63,931 nt of DNA, filler included, from Octopus bimaculoides (GCF_001194135.2; 7 parts of 7 records of this genome joined end to end with filler, not necessarily neighbours in it); one strand, 5' to 3'. Shown: positions 46,290 through 59,977, counted from the whole stretch's first letter. The notes: a model not told the origin generated them from the sequence alone. Made by a program: numbers and translations.

Positions 46290-46800
46290 ATGGTCAAACT
46301 CGTTGTTTTGGGCATCCTTTCTGTTGTTATGGTCAAACTCAATGTCATCATCATTGTCAGATTGGTCAAAATCAGTGTAGCCAAACTCATTGTTGTCATG
46401 GCCAAACACTTTGTTGCCATGGCCAAACTCAAATCAGTATGGTCAAATCTTTGTTGTTGTGTTCAAACTTTGTTGTGATGGTCAAACTTTATGTCATGTT
46501 GGTCAAACTCTTTGTTGTGATGGTCAAACTTTATGTCATGTTGGTCAAACTCTTTGTTGTGATGGTCAAACTTTGTCATGTTGGTCAAACTCTTTGTTGT
46601 GATGGTCAAACGTTATGTCATGTTGGTCAAACTCTTTGTTGTGATGGTCAATCTCTTTGTCATGATCGTCAAAGTATTTGTTGTTATGTTCAAACTCTTC
46701 ATCAATGCAGCTGAATTCTTCATCAACATGATCAAACTCGTTAGACTGATCATGCAATTTGTAATTGTGGTCAAACTTATTGTTGTCATGGCCAAATCTC
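46290..46800. repeat. Minisatellite with a 21-bp subunit and a 42-bp higher-order unit
   Basis: ATGGTCAAACTTTATGTCATG+TTGGTCAAACTCTTTGTTGTG, homogeneous at ~46475-46650 and degenerate at the edges. Confidence 0.9.
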
Positions 46801-46807
46801 TGTTGTC

Positions 46808-47010
46808 ATACAGTTCTATATTTAAGAGATGAGGAATTATGAACATTAATTACAATTGATGGATATTTGTCTTCATCTTGTTTGTTGTTAGCACAAGGTT
46901 TCGGTTGATATACCCTCCAGCCTTCATCAGGTGTCTTGGGGAAATTTAGAACCTGGGTTCTCATTCCTAAGGTATTTTTCGATGTTATTATTATTATTGT
47001 TGTTGTTGCT
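46808..47010 (-). mobile_element. 5'-truncated copy of the hammerhead-bearing SINE-like element (family C); HHR motif at 46890-46935
   Basis: Near-identical to the arms of the 50542-51046 palindrome. Minus strand reads GACAC-CTGATGA-A-GGCTG..CAACC-GAAAC-CTT-GTGCT. Confidence 0.85.
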
Positions 47011-47179
47011 TTTTTTCTTCTTCCTTCAAATTTTCTTCCATTTCTTGCTGAGTGTTTTCCATACATCTAGGACAGAGAAGCTCATTGGATGCATTCCCAT
47101 TTTACACACGCAAATTCACAGGTAAAATATGTATTTAAAAAAATTAATAAATAAATAAATTCATGAATGGATGTTGTTT

Positions 47180-47425
47180 TCACAGCGATAATGCTCTTCT
47201 CAGTACATGAGTTGTTCCAGTTAACACAATTTTTTGCACTTCCTGTAGGGATAGTAAACCTGGTATCATTTTCAAATAGGTTTCAGTACCTTTTTTTTTA
47301 TCATTTCTAGAGATCCTACAATCACTGGTACGGTAGTCACCTTGAGGTGCCACATTTTTTCAATTTCTATTAGCAAGCCTTTATATTTACTGATCTTGTC
47401 AAATTCTTTCGCCACTATATTGTGA
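47180..47425 (-). mobile_element. R4/Dong-like LINE C-terminus (RLE endonuclease end)
   Basis: KISKYKGLLIEIEKMWHLKVTTVPVIVGSLEMIKK, a frameshift, then GTETYLKMIPGLLSLQEVQKIVLTGTTHVLRRALSL*. Confidence 0.85.
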
Positions 47426-50399
47426 TCGCAATATGATGATGATGATGATGATGATGATGATGGCAATGATGACGACAATAACGATGAAGATGACAATGAT
47501 GATGACAATGCCAATGATGATGGAGATGGTGATGATGACGATGATGATGACAACGACACTTGCATGGTTTTTCTATCAAATGCAAGAATATATTTATAGC
47601 TCCAAGAAAGTCTTCTAAAACCTCTTTTACCCCCTATGATATTTTCTCTAGGTAATCTTCCCAATTTGTTGTGCTACAGGAACTAAATCAACACAAAACT
47701 ATATCAAATAACTAGCAATTCAAATTTATAAGTAAAGAAACAAACAGTTATATATATTTGTCCAGTGTCATTGGATATTTTTGTTACTGTGTAAGATAAA
47801 GGCATCTGAAGCAGTAAATGCTTGATAAGGAAATATCTAATCAAACTATGAAAATATTATGGTTTTCTTTTTTCCTTTCAGAAAATCTTCAAAATGGTTG
47901 TTCTCTTCACTGCTTCCAAAGTGGTATAAAGAAGTAGTACATCTAACATTGCAGTTTGTTTGCTTCTATGGACCCTTCTCACTTCTTGAAATAACTCATG
48001 AAATAAAATAAATAAAGTAAAATAGGAAAAAAAATAAATGTATCCCATAGCCATCCATGTGTAAAAAAATAACAAAAACAAAAACAAAAAAATGCTTGCA
48101 CTTTATTTAACAGTCCATGCGTATTGATTTTAAATGTGTTAAAGAAAATAAAGTCTTCATACACTTGGAAGCATTTTATTTTTATAACTTTAAAACATTC
48201 TAATAAATTCCAGTTTTGTTGTTTAGGAAAAGACAAAGAATATAAAAATTAAAAAATAACTAAAATACTGGGAATTCTGAAAAGAAACTAAACTAAATTT
48301 CTAAAATTTTATGGAAACTTTTAAAGATATTTCGTGTTGTGTTCAATGAAATTTACAGATAAATTTATCTTAGATACATAGCACAACTGAATTTCACTTG
48401 TTTAAATTGCTAGTTAGCTACTTGGAAAAACATAGAAACTGATGTCATTGCTGTATATGTCTCTGCAGAAAGACCCCAGAGCAAGAATAAGCTGTTACTA
48501 ATATAAACCAAACTGACTCCATCACTGTTGAATTCTCTAGTAATAAGTACTAACTATCCCCATCACCACATCACAGTTTCTCTGTAATCTTTTTTTTTTT
48601 TAGATATTCTCTGTTTTTAATGTATCCAACAAATTGAAGGAAGTTACAATGATCTCCAGGAAATAGTTCAATTCCTGTATACAATTTATTATTTCAATTT
48701 GTGAAGAATAACTGCAAAGTCAAGGAATTATTACGACTCAATTTCAAGTTCTTATTTTGAAATGGTTAAAAGATGTCAGCAAACATATGTGCTGACATGT
48801 ATAAGTGAAATGGTATCAACCCAAAAATGTCAACTAAAACACTTCAAGGTGGTGCTCCAGCATGGCCACAGTTAAATGACTGTAACAAATAAAAGAATAA
48901 GAGAATAAAAGAATGTGTAGATAGGGAATTCCAGAAAGCTGAGATTCTAAGGAAAAAAGGACCAAGAACACAATAAGGTACAACCAGAGGCTAAAATACA
49001 TAATAGGACAAATGAAAGAGAGAGGAGTAAGTCAAGAAGATAAGGAAAGTTCTATTAGACTGTCTTACCAAAGTCACCTTTATGACTCACCTTGCAAATG
49101 AAGTTACTAGTGAGTATAATGTATGACTGAAAGGAAACAAGAAGAAGAAAAAAGTTATTAGTGTCATGAATACAATGAGATTTGGGAGGGAATAATTGGA
49201 TCAAATTTGATGATGTTAAAACTGAACAGGTGAAAAGATGTAAGAATTTAAGTTATGGCTGATGAGGAGTGGATGTGTATATCTCACCATGCCAGTATAG
49301 AAATATATAAAGAAAAAAAAAAGTCGTTAAAGCTGGTGATTAGTATGATGAGGAAGATGACAATGATGATGATGAGGAGGAGGAGGAGGAGGAAGAGGAG
49401 AAAGAGAAAGAGGGTGGTGGTTGTGAAGGAGTAGGAGGAAGGGAGATAGTGGTTGTGGTTATAGTGATGATGATGATGATGGTGGTGATGGTGGTGGGGT
49501 GGGGATTTCTGATGGTGATGATAATGATGTCAAGGATAAGGAGGAGGAGGTGATAATGATAGTGATGATAATGATTGGGAGATTAATAGTGGTGGTGATG
49601 ATGATGATGATGTGGAGGGAGAAGAGGAGGGAGAGATGATGATGATGATGAGGGAATCCATGCTGGTGATGATGATGATGATGACAATGAGAAGGAAGAA
49701 GGGGTGGAGGAGGAGATAATACTGCTGCTGCTGCTGCTGCTGATGGTGGTGGTGGTGGTGGTGGCAAAAATGGTAATAAAAATGAGAAAATTTAGCTGTA
49801 AGAATATGAAAGACAATTATAATAATGATGACAATGATGATGACAATGACGGTGGCGATGATGATGATGATACACATGTTGATGATACACATGTTGATGA
49901 TATAATGATGATGATGATGTAAAAAAATAAAGTCGCTACACCATCATCATCATCATCATCGTTTAATGTGCACTTTTGTTGAAGCAGATCATCTACAGCT
50001 GAATGCCCTTCCTGTCACCAACTTTCACCTTTTTCCAAGCAAGGTAATTTTTCCCTATGGTCAAACATGCTTTTTCATGGCAGTCTTGAAATTAGCAGCC
50101 TTGTTTGTATGGCTTTGAGGCTTAATTTACAACAACCCCATGATGTCTAGACAAGGGTGCACACAAACACATGTTCATACATATACATGTGTGTGTTCAC
50201 GAGACAAGTTTCTTCCAGTTTCCATTTACCAAATCTATTCACAAGGCTTTGGTTGGCCCAGTAGAAGAAACTTGTCCAAGGTGCTGCATTGCAGGACTGA
50301 ACCCAATACCAGTAAGGAGCATACACCTCAACCACACTACTATGTCTGTTGCCTTTTATAAATGAAAAGAAATGAAAAACACATTTGCTAATTTTGTAT

Positions 50400-50720
50400 G
50401 AGCAGTCAGAAGATTTGATACCATCAACCCAGAATTTGATATCAACAATTATAAAACTTGATATTAAAAAGTCACAGTGTTGTACCAATATCCTTAACCT
50501 CCTTAGAATTTAGTACCTCCAACCACAGAACTGAAATTTTCTACAGTTCTATATTTAAGAGATGAGGAATTATGTACATTATTTACATTTGACGGATATT
50601 TGTCCTTATCTTGTTTGTTGTTAACATGTTTCGGCTGATATACCCTCCAGCCTTCATCAGGTGTCTTGGGGGAAATTTCGAACCTGGGTTCTCATTCCTA
50701 AGGTATTTTTCAATGTTATT

Positions 50721-50752
<32 letters not shown>

Positions 50753-50860
50753 CCATGTCACTGCCTGGAATCAAACTTGGAATCTTGAGGTTAGTAGTGC
50801 GGGCTTCTAACCTCAAGATTCCGAGTTTGATTCCAGGCAGTGACCTGAATAATAATGATG

Positions 50861-50899
<39 letters not shown>

Positions 50900-51800
50900 T
50901 CGAAAAATACCTTAGGAATGAGAACCCAGGTTCGAAATTTCCCCAAGACACTTGATGAAGGCTGGAGGGTATATCAGCTGAAACGTTGTGTTAACAACAA
51001 ACAAGATGAAGATAACTATCCGTCAAATGTAAATAATGTATATAATGAAATTTTTTAGTTTAGCTAGAACTGAAATTTTCTAATTTAGCTATAAGAATAA
51101 GAAAGATGATTATAATAATGATGATGATGATGATGACAATGATGATGATGGTGCTAATATCCACAGAATTTGAAACCAAAAGCTATAGACTTTAGTATCA
51201 ATGCCTACTGAACTTAGTATAAGCAGTGACAGAACCTACTACAAACTTGGTACCAACAATCACACATCATGGTACCAACAACTTGGTACCACTATCTTCA
51301 GAACTAAGTGCCAACAGTCCCAAAAAATTGTACTAAAAACCACAAAATTTGGTACCAACAATTACAAAATTTGATGTCAAGATCCCCCAAATTTTATACT
51401 AACAACTTAGTAATGACAGACACAGAACTTGGTACCAACATCCATAGAAATGTGGTGCCAAACGTCACAGAACTTAGTACTAGAATCCACAGACGTTGGT
51501 GCCAATAGACTATATTCATGGTACCAAGACACCAGAATTTGCAACAATAGTTTTGCACCAACAGTTACAGTTCTTGGTGACAATAGCCACAGAGTTTGCT
51601 GCCAACAAATTCATACCAACAGTCACAGAACTGGATACCAACCTCTACAGATATTAGGACTAACGACCACAGAACTTGGTACCAGTATTCACAAAATTTG
51701 GTGAATACTACAGTCAAAGAATTTGTATTGAGTGTCACATAACTTGGCAACAACAGTTGTAGAATTTGGTAGCAACTGCTACAAAACTGAGAGTTTCCAA
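50400..51800. repeat. Degenerate ~22-bp tandem array (consensus CACAGAACTTGGTACCAACAGT), interrupted by the 50542-51082 insertion
   Basis: The motif recurs about every 21-23 bp over 51165-51800, with a few units at 50410-50540. Confidence 0.7.
50542..51046. mobile_element. Head-to-head palindromic dimer of tRNA-headed, HHR-bearing family C
   Basis: The arms are reverse complements around a centre at ~50798-50803. Each arm has a B-box-like GAGTTTGATTCC, a (TAA)n tract and an HHR motif (50623-50665 minus; 50947-50992 plus). Confidence 0.9.
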
Positions 51801-52649: not shown

Positions 52650-53335
52650 GTTAGGATCAGATGAAACCTTGAATAAAACAGGTGAACAAGCGGAAATAAG
52701 CCTTGTCCACAGTGCCAATATCACAACATAACCATAATACTTCCTGGCTGAAATAAAACAGATATTTTTTTTTTTCTTTTTTTTTTCGGTTATTGGATTT
52801 TTAAAGCAGGAAGAGGACGGTGCCAGGTGTTGCTAATGAATAGCACTTAATAACTTTCAGTGTTGCTAATGAATTGCACTGAGTGACCTCAGAGACTGGC
52901 AAACGGTGGGAGGGAGTGGAAGAAGGCTGTCAATTGTGTATGTCTGTGTGTGTGTGTGTGTGTGTGCACGATTGTGTGTTTGCAAGTGTGTGTGTGGGTG
53001 TGTGCCTGGGTGTGTATGTATGGGGAAGGGGTGGTAGGAGATTCAATGACACTCTAGATGTGTGCACACATGTACGTCCATATACATCCACATGCAGACA
53101 CATAATAACATGTATAAAATAAACATATTTATGTCTACCTTTGTTTATATACTCCTGTATTTCATAACAGTGTATGTGTTCATGAGTATATACTTATATA
53201 TATTATTATCATAAATATACATATATATGTATATATCCACATACATGCATAAACATGTATATATACACATATATATATGTGTGTGTGAGTATATATACAT
53301 ATATGTATATATGTATATATATATANNNNNNNNNN

Positions 53336-53858: not shown

Positions 53859-55116
53859 NNNNNNNNNNNNNNNNNNNNNNNNNNNNNNNNNNNNNNNNNN
53901 NNNNNNNNNNNNNNNNNNNNNNNNNNNNNNNNNNNNNNNNNNNNNNNNNNNNNNNNNNNNNNNNNNNNNNNNNNNNNNNNNNNNNNNNNNNNNNNNNNNN
54001 NNNNNNNNNNNNNNNNNNNNNNNNNNNNNNNNNNNNNNNNNNNNNNNNNNNNNNNNNNNNNNNNNNNNNNNNNNNNNNNNNNNNNNNNNNNNNNNNNNNN
54101 NNNNNNNNNNNNNNNNNNNNNNNNNNNNNNNNNNNNNNNNNNNNNNNNNNNNNNNNNNNNNNNNNNNNNNNNNNNNNNNNNNNNNNNNNNNNNNNNNNNN
54201 NNNNNNNNNNNNNNNNNNNNNNNNNNNNNNNNNNNNNNNNNNNNNNNNNNNNTCAATATAGTTTTTGTATTCTGTTCTTCAAGAATATGAATGGGTGTAA
54301 CTTGCGTGTCTATATATACAATTATGTTGTGTGTGTGTGTATTTGTGTATATATTTGTATGTCTAACAAATCCTGCTCCTGTATGTAAGAATATATGTAT
54401 ATAAAAGTGTATATGTGTATGTGTGGTCAGTATTACTAGAATGGAGGAAATCAAAATCTTTGAACTTTCCATATTTATTTTTCTTTAGATTTGATGGAGG
54501 AAATTCTGTTTTAATGCTGTACATTTTCTTCAGACATACACACAGAAAGACACAGATATATGTATATACATAAAAATACACGTTACACACATAAAAACAC
54601 ACGTAAAACTCACATAACATATACAAAGAAAACCACACACACACACACACACTATGACATACTCACACACACATGAATAAAACGCACCACGCACATATAT
54701 AGATCCTATCATATAAGCAGATACATGTAGAAAGCACACAGACATCAGCAGCTAACCCCATTAAATGTATTGACTGTCAAGGTTAAGTCAATAGTCAGGT
54801 ACACTTTGACTGTTTATTGGTTATAAGCTTAGATAAATCAACATATGTACACAAAGAACAAATTATGATAAATTACTGATATTGCTGATGAATTGTCAAC
54901 CCTGACTTTATGGAGCAAGCTGCCATTTGTTGAATCTTTCTTTCTCACACTCGTCTATTATTTTGTATTATATTAGATCAATTGCTCTTCATGTGCAGTC
55001 AAGTGTTTATTTAATAAAAAGACATTTATATTCTTTGTTCCTTCACTTTCCCTCTCTTTTTAAGAAAAATCAGTCAATTGTCTGGTTATTGTTTTTGAAT
55101 CTATATATATATATAT

Positions 55117-55573
55117 ATAGCTAGCTAGAGGCGATGGCTTCTTGGAGCTAATTCACGGCAGCTTTCGTCCTAATTTTGGGACTGCCATGTTGGCTTGGCG
55201 ATAACTATTAATTTCCAGTACCGCTGCCGTAGTCTCCTTTAGAGAGACTTAGAAATATTAATAACTCTATTTCTGAAAACCAGTGGATAGATTCCACTGA
55301 AATTAGATAAATAACCTTCGAACAGATAGTCAGCAGCGCCTCCTGGCCGGAGCTTGGCTGCTCTGCATTGACAAGGGGCAACACCCTGAAACTAGTCTGC
55401 AGATGCCAAACCAGCAGGGGGACACTGCTGACCTCCCCTGTTCGAAGGTTATAAAGGACACAGGTTTCGTGTGTCACATAGCTAGCTAGAGGCGATGGCT
55501 TCTTGGAGCTAATTCACGGCAGCTTTCGTCCTAATTTTGGGACTGCCATGTTGGCTTGGCGATAACTATTAAT
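55117..55573 (+). mobile_element. Retrozyme-like element: 361-nt unit plus a perfect 96-bp terminal direct repeat, inserted in (TA)n
   Basis: 55117-55212 is identical to 55478-55573. (TA)n lies on both flanks. The element is GC-richer than its flanks, rich in hairpins and has an internal HHR. Confidence 0.8.
55362..55403 (+). ncRNA. Minimal type I hammerhead ribozyme with U3:A8 covariation
   Basis: Stem I TCTGCA/TGCAGA; core TTGACAA (55368-74); stem II GGGG-CAACA-CCCT; GAAA; palindromic stem III ACTAGT; GUC cleavage after 55397. Confidence 0.8.
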
Positions 55574-56090
55574 ATATATATATATATATATATAAGATTT
55601 ATTTATGTTTAAGGATCATATGGGTTTATTTTTACACATGAAGTATCTGTCCGAAAGTATTTTCAGTATTTGTCATTGAATTTCTTTATTAGTCATTGAA
55701 TTGTATCTGCTGGACTATTTTACTTTATATAGTTTATTACCTGAGAGATAACACAGTTTAAATTTGCAAACAGAAAGTTCTATACAACAGTGGTGGACCC
55801 AAGGTGGAGCCTGAGAGGTACGTGCCCACCTCAAGAAAAGAAGTGTACCCTTCTAAATAATGTTATTATGTCCATTTCTCCTGGAATTGTATGCACTTCT
55901 GACCTTGTGCCCACCCTCCAAAAAACCCCTGGGACTGTGCCTATACCCTCTACTATATTATGATTAGTGGAAATTTAGGTAATGATGGAAAAAGACTTTG
56001 GAAATAAAGGAAGGTAATCAGAGAAAAGTTTTAATTTTGTACAATATTTGACAGCAAATAAGGTGCATTTAATAAGGTGAATGAGCTTAA

Positions 56091-56359: not shown

Positions 56360-57620
56360 TCCATCTTTTACTTGTTTCAGTCATTTTACTGCAGTCATGC
56401 TGGGATGCCAACTTCAATGGTTAAGTCAAACAAATTGATTCCAGTACTTAGTTTTAAGTCTAATTGGTCATTTTACCAAACTGATAAGTTATGGGGATGT
56501 AAACAAACTAACATTAGTTGTAAAGGTGCATGGAGGGAAGACACGCATACACACACACACACACACACACACACAACAGGCTTCCACACAGTTTCCATTT
56601 ACCAAATATACTCAGAAGGAATTGGTTTTTACGGTGCTACATTAAAAGACGTTTACCCAAAATGCTGTAGAGTAGGATTGAACCCAAAACGATGTGGCTG
56701 CAAAGTGAGCTTCTTAACCATGTGGCCAAGGCTGCATCTTATAAACAATTCTCTTTAAATCTGTTTTCACTTTAGTTCATTGCCCTTCACACTATCAGGT
56801 GTATTCAGACCCTTATGAATCCCAATATTTCTCATTAAAAACCTTTACTCTATATCTATCACATATCTGAAAAAAGAACCCTTTCCAACTCCCATGTGTT
56901 CAGTTAAATTCTAAGAAACTAGTTAATCTAGTCTGGTTATATAAAGCAAGTATAACATGTTCATTTAGGAAGCTTGCTGCCCAACCACATGGTTCTGGGT
57001 TCAGTCCCATTGCATAGCACCTTGGGTGAGTGTCTTCTACTATAGCCTCAGGCCACCAAAGCCTTGTAAGTGGATTTGGTAGACAGAAACTGAAAGAAGC
57101 TTGTTGCATATATATATATATATATGTGTGTGTATGTGTATGTGTGTGTGTGTACATATGTATGTATGTATATATTTATGTGTGTGTGTCTGCATTTGTT
57201 CCAACCAATGCTGGTGTGTTTATGTCTTAGCACTTCGGGAAAAGAGACCGATAGAATAAGTACTAGGCTAACAAAGAATAAGTCCTAGGGTCAATTTCTT
57301 CGACTAAAACCTTTTAGAGCAGTGCTCCAGCATGGCTGCAGTCAAATGACTGAAACATGTAAAAGAATAAAAGAATATTTAGTTTCATACACAAAAAAAA
57401 AAATCTTAAATTCATTACTCTTTACTCTTTTACTCTTTTACTTGTTTCAGTCATTTTACTGTGGCCATGCTGGAGCACCGCCTTTAGTTGAGCAAATCAA
57501 CCCCAGGACTTATTCTTTGTAAGCCTAGTACTTATTCTATCAGTTTCTTTTGCTGAAGTGCTAAGGTACAGGGACATAAACACACCAGCATCGGTTGTCA
57601 AACGATGTTGCGGGGACACG
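56360..57620. mobile_element. Cluster of three SINE family B copies (56360-56735 minus, 56966-57372 plus, 57415-57620 minus)
   Basis: Each matches 58155-58670 or its reverse complement. Confidence 0.8.
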
Positions 57621-57627
57621 GATGGAC

Positions 57628-58140
57628 AGGATGAAGAATGAGGAGGTGCAAAGGTGAGTAGGAATGAGAGCAAAAATAACAACCAAAATGGATAGATGAA
57701 TGTTGAGGTGGTTTGGTCACATGGAGAGGTTGAATGAGGAGCAGATGGTAAGTGAGGCGATGAAGGCAGAAGTGGTAGGCAGCTGAACTAGATGCAGACC
57801 TCAGTTTGTGTGGATGGATGGAGTAAGGAAAGCTTTGGTGGTTAGCGGTATTGGAGTGAGAGAGGCAAGGAAGTTTATAAATGATAGGAAAGCTTGGAGA
57901 GTGTTTGTAGATGGATGAGTGAACTTGATGTTGCTCAGAGGAGAATGGAACCTGCATGATGTGGTGGGGGTAAACCAGCATATGCTGTTGGGCTCCACTG
58001 CTGATATTGAGGGTTGCGTTCTATGCCTTGACCTGAGCATAAGATGGAGATCACCTCTTTGAGCTGGGAAATGAATGGAATGCCTGAGTGTGTCCTGTTG
58101 TGGCTTCTCCTTCCTAATGAAAATGGGGAATAGGCTTGGG
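57628..58140 (+). mobile_element. 3' end of a second RTE lineage (family R2)
   Basis: MKNEEVQR*VGMRAKITTKMDR*MLRWFGHMERLNEEQMV...RPQFVWMDGVRKAL...DRKAWRVFV, with a different 3' UTR from R1. Confidence 0.75.
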
Positions 58141-58154
58141 TATATATATATATA

Positions 58155-58333
58155 GGCGCAGGAGTGGCTGTGTGGTAAGTAGCTTGCTTACCAACTACAT
58201 GGTTCTGGGTTTAGTCCCACTGCGTGGCACCTTGGGCAAGTGTCTTCTACTATAGCCTCATGCCAACCAAAGCCTTGTGAGTGGATTTGGTAGACAGAAA
58301 CTGAAAGAAGCCCATCGTATATATATATGTATG

Positions 58334-58384
<51 letters not shown>

Positions 58385-58420
58385 NNNNNNNNNNNNNNNN
58401 NNNNNNNNNNNNNNNNNNNN

Positions 58421-58462
<42 letters not shown>

Positions 58463-58670
58463 AGTGTATATGTTTGTGTGTCTGTGTTTGTCCCCCCAAC
58501 ACCGCTTGACAACCGATGCTGGTGTGTTTATGTCCCCGTAACTTAGTAGTTTGGCAAAAGACACCGATAGAATAAGTACTAGGCTTGCAAAGAATAAGTC
58601 CTAGGGTCAATTTGCTAAAGGCGGTGCTCCAGCATGGCCACAGTCAAATGACTGAAACAAGTAAAAGAGT
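58155..58670 (+). mobile_element. Best full-length SINE family B copy (tRNA head, CORE-like CACCTTGGGCAAGTG, internal microsatellite, 3' body)
   Basis: GGCGCAGGAGTGGCTGTGTGGTAAGTAGC...GGGTTTAGTCCCAC head; ends GACTGAAACAAGTAAAAGAGTA. It resembles the octopus OR-type SINEs (name tentative). Another head lies at 59708-59870. Confidence 0.9.
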
Positions 58671-59082
58671 ATATATATATATATATATTAAATAAAATGA
58701 AATTTTTTTTAATCAAGCAAAATTACAAATTATTAATTGTCACTATTTATTTGTTCAATTGCATTGTCTTGAAAAAAGTGGATTACAATGAAAAATGCAG
58801 ACGCATGGAGGTTAATATTCTTAAGTTATTAAAACTGGAAAAGTACAAGACAAGTTATTACACCTGCAAAAGTACAGGACAAGCATATTTAAAATATTGC
58901 AGCTACAGTTAAAATTTAATAATATATTTAGATTTAAAAATTAAAAAAAATAGCTTTTATTAATTACTCTATAATTAAAAAATTAACTCAAATAATAAAT
59001 TAAAGGCTAACAGTTAGCTAAAAATAAAAAAAATTTCAATAACCCCATTAAAAATGTTTTTTCAGTTACAAGTTTTTAAATA

Positions 59083-59318: not shown

Positions 59319-59977
59319 TACTCCCATATCTATATGGATGGGTATATTGAGGGATTTATCTCCCCCAACATTTCATACCATATGAGCTATGTAGCCCCAT
59401 GCCAAGAAGAATTTTTTATATGGTATACTACTCACCGCCAAGCAAAAATTTTAATTAGGAAAAGTACCCAGCTCTCCAGAAAATATCACTGTACCCTCCC
59501 CTAAGCTTCAACGCCATCATAAAGGTAGCAATTAAACTTCCCTTTTTTGAAATTTCCAGAATATCAACCTTGTGGTGTCTTTATCAATGAATTATAGTGT
59601 GCCAATTTTTATCAGAAAGATGAACAAAAATGGAATTTCAGTTGAATAATACTTAAGAACTTTTAGTAGTTCTTAAAATCTTGTAATTGAAAAGACATTT
59701 TTAATGGGTGCAGGCATGGCTGTGTAGTAAGAAGCTTGCTTCCCAGCCACATGGTTCTGCATTCAGTCCCACTACATGGAACTTTAGGCAAGTATCTTCT
59801 ACTATATCCTCAGGCCAACCAAACCCTTGTAAGTGGATTTAGCAGACGGAAACTGAAAGAAGCACATCATATATATANNNNNNNNNNNNNNNNNNNNNNN
59901 NNNNNNNNNNNNNNNNNNNNNTTAATTAATTAANNNNNNNNNNNNNNNNNNNNNNNNNNNNNNNNNNNNNNNNNNNN

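What the first reader, a model, noticed from the sequence alone, without database searches (positions are those of the whole stretch)
55117..55573. Retrozyme-like element: a 361-nt ribozyme-bearing unit integrated as ~1.27 copies in (TA)n
Seen: a perfect 96-bp direct repeat (55117-55212 = 55478-55573), offset 361 nt, with (TA)n on both sides and no TIRs, TG..CA ends or recognisable ORF. The interior is densely self-complementary: 14-bp IR 55312-25/55438-51, GTCAGCAG/CTGCTGAC, CCTCCTGG/CCAGCAGG, TTGGC/GCCAA, plus hairpins CAGTGGA/TCCACTG, AGTCTC/GAGACT and GACAC/GTGTC. A hammerhead sits at the tip of this nested stem. Known: animal non-LTR retrozymes are ~150-400-nt units with type I HHRs that give circular RNAs and are thought to be mobilised by PLE machinery. 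Inference: this is a young insertion (the repeats are identical) made by more than one round of reverse transcription around a 361-nt circle, or a solo PLE pseudo-LTR. I do not know whether this family has been described in cephalopods.
Basis: partly seen in the sequence, partly recalled or inferred. Interest (0 to 1): 0.85.

Follow-up and report, generated by a model that had tools for sequence, protein, structure and literature searches.

The report
Hammerhead-ribozyme mini-retroelement inserted in a TA repeat
A 361-base non-coding mobile element carrying a self-cleaving hammerhead ribozyme sits as about 1.27 copies inside a (TA)n microsatellite; it is a fresh example of the known animal "retrozyme" / Penelope-associated kind, not a new kind of element.

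Summary
55117-55212 and 55478-55573 are identical (96 bp, offset 361) and lie between (TA)9 and (TA)11. There are no terminal inverted repeats and no ORF with homologues. The unit folds far better than shuffled sequence.

A type I hammerhead sits at 55362-55403 (+), at the tip of a long stem, with predicted cleavage at 55397/55398. It has a 6-bp helix I, a 4-bp helix II and a palindromic AC-UA-GU helix III. The core is non-consensus: U3-A8 replaces C3-G8, a covariation known to be natural and active, and 10.1-11.1 is a G·U pair.

Rfam's models miss the motif. A covariance model I built only from four experimentally validated retrozyme hammerheads finds it as the single strong hit in the piece (25.5 bits, E about 1e-5). 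A relaxed descriptor hits only here.

My best reading is a non-autonomous hammerhead retroelement of the non-LTR retrozyme / Penelope-dependent type. The cDNA would have been copied for more than one unit length from a circular or multimeric RNA and joined into (TA)n.

Three points are unproven. The locus has only one ribozyme. No other copy could be retrieved. In this gap-containing draft assembly, the perfect repeat could equally be a collapsed longer tandem array. I rate it a new member of a known kind, of moderate interest.

The parts
55102..55119 (.). Left half of the split target microsatellite, (TA)9. Its last 3 nt (ATA, 55117-55119) overlap the start of the 96-bp repeat, giving junction microhomology.
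55117..55212 (+). Copy 1 of the 96-bp terminal redundancy (segment A), the extra 0.27 unit at the 5' side
   Evidence: 100% identical to 55478-55573, spacing 361
55213..55477 (+). Unique 265-bp segment B of the unit. It contains three small hairpins and the long ribozyme-tipped stem.
55311..55452 (+). Long nested stem: 15-bp perfect outer stem 55311-25/55438-52, then GTCAGCAG/CTGCTGAC, then an imperfect CCTCCTGG/CCAGCAGG. It carries the hammerhead at its tip.
   Evidence: (I15, I12)
55354..55409 (+). Extended type I hammerhead. It comprises outer helix I (TTGGC/GCCAA), an asymmetric internal loop (TGC / T), inner helix I, the core, helix II and helix III.
55362..55403 (+). Hammerhead catalytic domain. 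Helix I is TCTGCA/TGCAGA (6 bp). The core U3-A9 is TTGACAA (55368-74). Helix II is GGGG/CCCT with loop CAACA (55375-87). G12-A14 is GAA (55388-90). Helix III is the palindrome ACTAGT (55391-96). C17 is at 55397, so predicted cleavage is between 55397 and 55398.
   Evidence: The covariance model R1, built from 4 validated retrozyme hammerheads, gives 25.5 bits, E about 1e-5, a full-length match and all 12 pairs standard. It is the only descriptor hit. It is not reported by Rfam.
55478..55573 (+). Copy 2 of the 96-bp segment A, forming the 3' end of the full unit B-A
55573..55594 (.). Right half of the split target microsatellite, (TA)11. The element's own last bases ...CTATTAAT run into it, giving microhomology.
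55208..55477 (-). 89-codon ORF on the antisense strand, most likely spurious
   Evidence: No homologue among 5.8 billion proteins, none with a six-frame query either, and no Pfam hit

Best explanation
This is a copy of a small (361-nt) non-coding, non-autonomous retroelement that carries a type I hammerhead ribozyme. In other words, it is a metazoan non-LTR 'retrozyme' or Penelope-dependent element, inserted into a (TA)n microsatellite.

The proposed mechanism rests on published work on this class and is inferred, not shown here. Master copies arranged in tandem are transcribed into multimers. Hammerheads of neighbouring units pair through the palindromic helix III (ACUAGU) and cut after GUC (the equivalent of 55397/55398). 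The unit-length RNA is circularised by a host RNA ligase. A Penelope-like RT/GIY-YIG endonuclease then nicks a (TA)n target, primes on an A/U-rich spot of the RNA (…CUAUUAAU), and copies about 1.27 unit lengths around the circle or along an uncleaved multimer. This gives the A-B-A structure, with an intact internal cleavage site and microhomology at both junctions.

This particular locus has only one ribozyme. At most it can be cut once, and probably only by pairing in trans. It is a dead-end 'monomer-type' offspring, unless the assembly has collapsed a longer array.
For: Shown by the sequence:
- The A-B-A layout has a 361-bp period between two TA runs.
- The unit has 47% GC against 35% for the surroundings.
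- There are no TIRs, no tRNA-like part and no ORF with homologues.
- The unit self-pairs very strongly: z = -7.9 as a linear RNA, and -143 kcal/mol as a circle opened at the cleavage site. Helices I and II of the ribozyme are kept in the minimum-energy fold.

Ribozyme:
- It is the only hit of a relaxed hammerhead descriptor in 13.9 kb on both strands, with 0.003 expected per shuffle and 0 of 5000 unit shuffles.
- The covariance model was built solely from coral, mussel and two axolotl retrozyme hammerheads that were shown to self-cleave (sequences from Suppl. Table 2 of PMC7229834). It scores the site at 25.5 bits, E about 1e-5, against 11.4 bits for the next hit.
- The architecture equals the validated ones: helix I 6 bp, helix II 4 bp, loop 2 of 5 nt, and a palindromic helix III like axolotl Ax330. 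The helix I sequence CUGCA/UGCAG is identical to the coral ribozyme.
- It matches the published description of canonical metazoan type I hammerheads (PMC4209133).
- U3-A8 is a documented natural covariation that is active in vitro (PMC3088659; PMC4209133).

Literature on the class:
- Units are 150-450 bp, below 50% GC, lack LTR/PBS/PPT, and are highly self-paired (PMC7229834).
- The published model has circRNA copied into oligomeric cDNA.
- Monomeric derivatives are common (preprint 10.64898/2026.07.22.740005).
- PLEs form partial tandems and prefer (TA)n (PMC8557442).
Against: - Rfam 15 hammerhead models give no hit, even at E<=10 on 76 nt.
- The core departs from consensus at three normally invariant positions: U3, A8 and U11.1. 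Self-cleavage is therefore unproven and may be weak.
- Helix III cannot close in a monomer because its loop is only 2 nt, and the locus has only one ribozyme.
- No second copy exists in the piece, and none could be found in any accessible collection. Multicopy status, tandem masters and covariation within the family are all untested.
- There is no PLE coding sequence in the piece.
- There is no sequence similarity to mussel or coral retrozymes outside the motif.
- The perfect identity of the two 96-bp copies is also what a collapsed tandem array would look like in a draft assembly with N gaps.
Confidence: 0.68

Rival explanations
1. It is the same kind of element, but the locus is really a longer tandem array (N.27 copies of near-identical 361-bp units) that a short-read assembler traversed only once. 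The '1.27 copies' and the perfect 96-bp identity would then be products of assembly, and the real locus would hold two or more hammerheads and could release unit-length or circular RNA.
For: The piece is a scaffolded draft with N runs of 10, 394 and 36 nt. The 96-bp repeat is the only perfectly identical repeat in a piece whose other repeats are 73-93% identical. Retrozymes typically occur as tandem arrays.
Against: No gap or N lies next to the element. Both outer junctions are clean and microhomologous to the TA runs. Monomeric and short forms are common in described families, and 75% of families have at most 7 units. Nothing in the sequence itself demands more copies.
Confidence: 0.22
2. It is an internally deleted or extremely 5'-truncated Penelope-like element in the usual partial-tandem (pseudo-LTR) arrangement, not a member of an independent retrozyme family. 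The 361 bp would be PLE terminal sequence.
For: PLE insertions typically form partial tandems, carry hammerheads in their terminal repeats and prefer (TA)n in some clades. Retrozyme consensus sequences in Xenopus are sister to PLE pLTRs. U3-A8 cores were first seen in PLE hammerheads of S. mansoni.
Against: There is no RT/GIY-YIG remnant and no long ORF in the piece. The ribozyme has the canonical helix I/II/III architecture reported for retrozymes, not the minimal PLE type with no helix III and a long, bulged helix II. The hammerhead lies outside the duplicated 96 bp, whereas PLE hammerheads lie inside the pLTR.
Confidence: 0.12
3. It is not a ribozyme element at all. A local duplication arose by slippage or unequal exchange near a TA microsatellite, in a structured, GC-richer sequence that happens to contain a degenerate hammerhead-like motif.
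For: Rfam finds no hammerhead. Three core positions are non-consensus. Only one copy is available for study.
Against: The chance of such a motif in a 361-nt unit is below 1 in 5000 shuffles. The independent covariance model gives E about 1e-5. The two core changes at positions 3 and 8 are mutually compensatory, as in known active variants. The palindromic helix III, the 6/4-bp helices and the asymmetric helix I loop match validated ribozymes. A slippage duplication would not place both ends of a foreign, GC-richer block exactly inside one TA run.
Confidence: 0.06

Closest known systems
Metazoan non-LTR retrozymes (Cervera & de la Pena 2020, PMC7229834), e.g. Mytilus galloprovincialis 350-390-bp repeats, Acropora 220-240-bp repeats, axolotl Rtz330/350
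   Same: The unit size fits: 361 bp, against 350-390 bp in the mussel, another mollusc. GC is below 50%. There is no LTR, PBS, PPT or coding capacity. The predicted RNA is highly self-paired with the ribozyme left free to fold. The type I hammerhead has a 6-bp helix I, a 4-bp helix II and a short palindromic helix III. More-than-unit-length head-to-tail organisation is present.
   Different: Only 1.27 units and one ribozyme are present at this locus. The core carries U3-A8 and G10.1-U11.1 instead of the consensus. There is no primary-sequence similarity outside the motif. Expression, circularity and copy number are unknown.
Penelope-like elements and their pseudo-LTR hammerheads (Cervera & de la Pena 2014, PMC4209133; Craig et al. 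2021, PMC8557442)
   Same: It shares the partial-tandem (pLTR-like) A-B-A layout. It is inserted into (TA)n, the preferred target reported for Naiad and hypothesised for Neptune endonucleases. It carries a type I hammerhead. The U3-A8 core covariation was first described in Cercyon PLE hammerheads.
   Different: There is no RT/GIY-YIG ORF. The ribozyme is of the canonical type, not the minimal type. The ribozyme lies outside the duplicated segment.
Classical hammerhead satellites / SINE-like repeats: newt satellite 2, Schistosoma Sm-alpha, Dolichopoda pDo500 (named; now grouped with retrozymes)
   Same: These are units of about 300-500 bp with one type I hammerhead whose weak helix III requires a double-hammerhead (dimer) conformation.
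   Different: Those occur as long arrays or very many dispersed copies with consensus CUGANGA cores. Here a single short copy with a variant core is all that can be seen.
Plant LTR retrozymes (PMC4918200, PMC5680766)
   Same: They are non-autonomous, produce ribozyme-delimited circular RNA, and are mobilised by another element's RT.
   Different: The plant elements have type III hammerheads inside 300-400-bp LTRs, a PBS, a PPT, 4-bp TSDs and a total size of 1-1.5 kb. None of these features is present here.

Membership tests
Hammerhead ribozyme, type I | Conserved core CUGANGA ... GAAA ... UH with a C3-G8 pair | tested here: met
   The site reads UUGACAA ... GAAA ... GUC. Positions 3 and 8 are changed together to U-A, a natural covariation shown to be active in vitro (PMC3088659; PMC4209133). 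The remaining deviation is a G10.1-U11.1 wobble.
Hammerhead ribozyme, type I | Three helices around the core, with helix I open | tested here: met
   Helix I is 6 bp, plus 5 bp after a 3/1-nt internal loop. Helix II is 4 bp. Helix III is 2 bp with a 2-nt loop and forms a 6-nt palindrome. All 12 modelled pairs are standard.
Hammerhead ribozyme, type I | Recognition by the curated Rfam covariance models at gathering score | tested here: not met
   No hammerhead family is listed, even at E<=10 on 511 nt or 76 nt. My own model built from 4 validated retrozyme hammerheads does recognise it: 25.5 bits, E about 1e-5.
Hammerhead ribozyme, type I | Site-specific self-cleavage | not testable with these tools
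   This needs in-vitro transcription of monomeric and dimeric constructs.
Metazoan non-LTR retrozyme | Short (about 150-450 bp) non-coding unit, GC below 50%, without LTR/PBS/PPT | tested here: met
   The unit is 361 bp with 47% GC. Its only ORF has no homologues, and there are no TIRs or tRNA-like parts.
Metazoan non-LTR retrozyme | Head-to-tail tandem copies, each with a hammerhead (at least 2 ribozymes, so that a unit can be excised) | tested here: inconclusive
   Head-to-tail redundancy is present but covers only 1.27 units with a single hammerhead. Monomeric derivatives are part of described families, and the draft assembly could have collapsed an array.
Metazoan non-LTR retrozyme | Highly self-paired predicted (circular) RNA | tested here: met
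   z = -7.9 for the plus strand. The circular fold gives -143.1 kcal/mol with helices I and II of the ribozyme preserved.
Metazoan non-LTR retrozyme | Multicopy family, expressed as linear and circular RNA, co-existing with PLEs in the genome | not testable with these tools
   No eukaryotic genome or transcriptome collection was available. No other copy was found in the piece or in the collections searched.
Penelope-like element (terminal repeat of an autonomous copy) | Adjacent ORF with RT and GIY-YIG endonuclease | tested here: not met
   The longest stop-to-stop frames in 13.9 kb are at most 143 codons and mostly low-complexity. The 10 best gave no RT or GIY-YIG Pfam hit.
Penelope-like element (terminal repeat of an autonomous copy) | Minimal hammerhead (no or vestigial helix III, long bulged helix II) located inside the pLTR | tested here: not met
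   The architecture is canonical with a 4-bp helix II. The ribozyme lies in the unique segment, outside the 96-bp repeat.
Penelope-like element (terminal repeat of an autonomous copy) | Partial-tandem insertion structure and a microsatellite ((TA)n) target | tested here: met
   The A-B-A layout lies between (TA)9 and (TA)11. This behaviour is described in PMC8557442.
Plant LTR retrozyme | Type III hammerheads in 300-400-bp LTRs, PBS, PPT, 4-bp TSD | tested here: not met
   The ribozyme is type I, with helix I open. The 96-bp repeat lacks the ribozyme, and the flanks are TA runs.
DNA transposon / MITE or Helitron | Terminal inverted repeats with a TA TSD, or 5'-TC ... CTRR-3' ends with a 3' hairpin | tested here: not met
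   No TIR exists other than the TA runs themselves. The ends read GCTAGCTAG... and ...CTATTAAT on the plus strand, and neither strand gives TC...CTRR termini.

The most novel reading that the evidence does not exclude
The locus is a true, recent 1.27-unit insertion of an active retrozyme family that uses a U3-A8 hammerhead core in an otherwise canonical type I scaffold, a combination the curated Rfam models do not recognise. On this reading its permuted ends, uninterrupted cleavage/ligation site and TA-microhomology junctions are a direct genomic footprint. They would record target-primed reverse transcription running more than once around a circular RNA by a (TA)n-specific Penelope-like endonuclease/RT. 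That step of the retrozyme life cycle has so far only been proposed. If the source is indeed a cephalopod, it would also be the first retrozyme family described there.
Probability: 0.25. Interest if true: 0.55.

Novelty: new member of a known kind. Interest (0 to 1): 0.38.

Why it matters
Animal retrozymes are abundant sources of small circular RNAs, and their mobilisation mechanism is still only a model. A clean insertion that is longer than one unit would be concrete support for copying from a circular or multimeric RNA by PLE machinery. That holds if three conditions are met: the ends are permuted relative to the ribozyme cleavage site, the insertion sits in the microsatellite type preferred by some Penelope-like endonucleases, and the structure is confirmed with long reads and with other copies.

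There is also a practical point. This ribozyme is invisible to Rfam's hammerhead models yet scores well with a model built from validated retrozyme ribozymes. Genome annotations based on Rfam, such as the 235 'hammerhead 1' loci reported for the giant squid, therefore probably undercount U3-A8 families.

Otherwise the element fits an already described class. The finding is useful but not surprising.

Tried and rejected
1. Rfam scans of the whole piece, of 511 nt and of 76 nt found no hammerhead or other ribozyme on either strand. The hits were microsatellite or hairpin 'miRNA' noise.
2. I looked for other copies in several ways, all negative:
   - blastn of the unit against the piece found only itself.
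   - The antisense 89-aa ORF was used as a handle in the 5.8-billion-protein collection, with no hit.
   - A six-frame, stop-masked 935-aa query found nothing.
   - Exact and gapped hammerhead patterns were searched in metagenome contigs and viral contigs, with 0 hits.
3. I tried to identify the organism through a LINE-like tail fragment. It gave 25 unnamed ENA/JGI ORFs on eukaryote-like contigs, with no taxon information and no retrozyme copy in the two loci fetched. The cephalopod origin stays unverified.
4. A Pfam scan of the ten most protein-like open frames found no RT or endonuclease.
5. I tested similarity to mussel and coral retrozymes outside the ribozyme and found none above shuffles.
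6. A MAFFT alignment of the five hammerheads misaligned the 3' half, so I tabulated the pairs by hand.
7. The energy of the monomeric catalytic fold is undefined because helix III would need a 2-nt hairpin loop. I take this as support for a dimer-type ribozyme.
8. The MITE, Helitron, tRNA-SINE and plant-LTR-retrozyme readings were rejected on end structure and motif content.
9. The paper by Przybilski & Hammann 2007 on C3-G8 exchanges is not held in the library. I relied on its citation in PMC3088659.

Full report
**What is in the sequence**

Positions 55117-55212 and 55478-55573 are identical over 96 bp, with a start-to-start distance of 361 bp. The layout is A(96)-B(265)-A(96), or 1.27 units.

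The block is bounded by pure (TA)9 (55102-55119) and (TA)11 (55573-55594). Runs of (TA)>=6 make up only 1.6% of the 13.9-kb piece. A foreign block with 47% GC, in 35% GC surroundings, that has both ends inside TA runs therefore looks like an insertion that split one microsatellite.

The first three bases of the repeat (ATA) and the last bases (…TAAT) can be read either as element or as microsatellite. Both junctions are thus microhomologous, and the true redundancy is 91-96 bp.

There are no terminal inverted repeats other than the TA runs, no TG..CA ends and no tRNA-like part. The only ORF is an antisense frame of 89 codons. It has no relatives and no Pfam match.

The outer stem is 15 bp, and CCTCCTGG/CCAGCAGG has a mismatch. 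The unit is far more structured than shuffled sequence on both strands, with z = -7.9 and -9.5.

**The ribozyme**

At the tip of the long stem 55311-55452 the plus strand reads as follows:

| Element | Sequence |
|---|---|
| Outer helix I, 5' strand | TTGGC |
| Internal loop, 5' side | TGC |
| Helix I, 5' strand | TCTGCA |
| Core, positions 3-9 | TTGACAA |
| Helix II with loop CAACA | GGGG-CAACA-CCCT |
| G12-A14 | GAA |
| Helix III | AC-TA-GT |
| Position 17 | C |
| Cleavage site | between 55397 and 55398 |
| Helix I, 3' strand | TGCAGA |
| Internal loop, 3' side | T |
| Outer helix I, 3' strand | GCCAA |

This is the type I hammerhead topology with the canonical metazoan dimensions: helix I of 6 bp, helix II of 4 bp, and helix III of 1-2 bp capped by a short palindromic loop (PMC4209133).

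The core deviates from CUGANGA at positions 3 and 8. The two changes are mutually compensatory, U3-A8 for C3-G8. That covariation occurs in natural hammerheads, and such variants are active in vitro (PMC3088659). It was also found in about 1,300 Schistosoma PLE-type motifs. A third deviation is a G·U wobble instead of G-C at 10.1-11.1. One validated axolotl retrozyme hammerhead also has U at 11.1.

**Is the motif more than chance?**

Rfam 15 does not report any hammerhead here, even at E<=10 on a 76-nt slice. That is a real negative, so I ran two independent tests.

- A relaxed descriptor allowed either core pair, helix I of at least 5 bp, helix II of at least 3 bp and helix III of at least 2 bp. 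It hits only this site in the piece. It is expected 0.003 times per dinucleotide-shuffled piece and appeared in 0 of 5000 shuffled units.
- I took the four retrozyme hammerheads whose self-cleavage was shown experimentally: coral Amil224, mussel Mg353, and axolotl Ax353 and Ax330 (Suppl. Table 2 of PMC7229834). I aligned them without the window sequence, imposed the hammerhead structure, built a covariance model and searched the piece on both strands with filters off.

The top hit of that model is 55362-55403 (+). It matches the full model at 25.5 bits with E about 1e-5 (rough calibration), and all 12 pairs are standard. The runner-up scores 11.4 bits.

Side by side, the window motif has the same helix lengths and loop-2 size as the validated four. 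Its helix I sequence is the same as the coral ribozyme's (CUGCA/UGCAG), and its 2-bp/2-nt palindromic helix III matches Ax330.

I therefore accept the hammerhead as real in the sense of homology and architecture. Its catalytic competence is not shown.

**Consequences of the anatomy**

- Helix III cannot close in a monomer, because a 2-nt loop has no defined energy. ACUAGU is self-complementary, with a duplex energy of -6.2 kcal/mol. This is the classical dimer-dependent design of newt, axolotl and many other metazoan hammerheads.
- The 96-bp repeat does not include the ribozyme, so the locus contains one hammerhead. It cannot excise a unit-length RNA on its own. In the vocabulary of the 2026 preprint it is a 'monomer' type derivative.
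- The predicted cleavage/ligation site is internal and uninterrupted, and the insertion ends are permuted relative to it. The template therefore cannot have been a linear, self-cleaved monomer. It must have been a circle or an uncleaved multimer. This is inference.

**Most likely mechanism**

The published model for non-LTR retrozymes has four steps: transcription of tandem masters, hammerhead self-cleavage, ligation to a circular RNA by a host ligase, and reverse transcription into oligomeric cDNA by an autonomous element's machinery, with PLEs as the prime candidate.

PLEs themselves insert as partial tandems (pseudo-LTRs). Some clades strongly prefer (TA)n, which hides target-site duplications.

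The A-B-A structure, the TA target and the microhomologous junctions fit this model point by point. None of the steps is demonstrated by the present data.

**Rival readings**

- The most serious caveat concerns structure, not identity. The piece is a scaffolded draft with three N gaps, and the 96-bp repeat is the only perfect repeat in it. A longer array of near-identical units would be assembled into exactly this one-turn-plus-overlap form. 'Identical repeats, hence young single insertion' is therefore not established.
- The element could be an internally deleted PLE. I think this less likely, because there is no RT/GIY-YIG remnant in 13.9 kb. In addition, the ribozyme is of the canonical type and not the minimal PLE type, and it lies outside the duplicated segment. 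If retrozymes are simply non-autonomous PLE derivatives, as the 2026 preprint argues, the distinction is semantic.
- A chance motif in a slippage duplication is unlikely, given the statistics above.

**What could not be done**

No eukaryotic genome or transcriptome collection was available. All attempts to retrieve further copies failed. As a result, copy number, tandem masters, family-level covariation, PLE partners, expression and circularity remain open.

In the literature searched, no paper connects retrozymes with cephalopods. The giant-squid genome paper lists 235 Rfam 'hammerhead 1' loci without further analysis.

**Verdict**

The specific history, a young event templated on a circle with 1.27 turns, is plausible but untested.

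This is a new member of a known kind. Two features are mildly notable: a U3-A8 core in a canonical retrozyme-type hammerhead that Rfam misses, and a junction structure that would illustrate the proposed rolling-circle reverse transcription into (TA)n if long reads validate it.

Noticed in passing
window 56966-57300, 58152-58613, 59704-59877 (+) and 50160-50253 (inverted): An interspersed SINE-like repeat family has at least four copies at 82-85% identity. Each copy runs into TG/TA microsatellites, and translated frames share '...GLNPEPCGW...' strings. ARAGORN found no tRNA head.
   Followed up: partly
window 48830-48907, 57300-57377, 58602-58679 (+); 56364-56403, 57434-57473 (inverted): A second short repeat (…GGTGCTCCAGCATGGCCACAGTCAAATGACTGAAACAAGTAAAAGA…) occurs in both orientations. 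The inverted pairs (e.g. 57431-57487 / 58615-58671, 98% complementary) produce the spurious Rfam 'MIR841' hit at 57293-57499 (58 bits against a gathering score of 200).
   Followed up: partly
window 47183-47450 (-): This is the 3'-terminal fragment of a non-LTR retrotransposon ORF with one frameshift (…IEIEKMWHLKVTTVPVIVGSL… / …LQEVQKIVLTGTTHVLRRAL…), preceded by a Ser-rich low-complexity stretch. Its relatives are unnamed 86-aa ORFs on ENA/JGI contigs, up to 77% identical. In the fetched 89-kb ENA contig, other ORFs carry RVT_1.
   Followed up: partly
window 46809-47019, 50542-50753 (direct, 86-93%) and 50860-51046 (inverted, 89-98%): Another repeat is present three times. Two copies form a near-perfect palindrome around 50800 (arms 50669-50753 / 50860-50944, 98% complementary) with (ATT)n/(AAT)n in the middle.
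   Followed up: no
window 46369-46699: A minisatellite with a 21/42-nt period has about 15 copies at 71-92% matches.
   Followed up: no
window 53326-53335, 53859-54252, 58385-58420: N runs of 10, 394 and 36 nt sit inside or next to TA/TG microsatellites. The piece is therefore a scaffolded draft, which matters for trusting repeat copy numbers.
   Followed up: yes
window 57947-58017 (+): A weak SECIS_1 match (25.4 bits against a gathering score of 35, E 0.29) lies in non-coding repeat-rich sequence and is probably chance.
   Followed up: no
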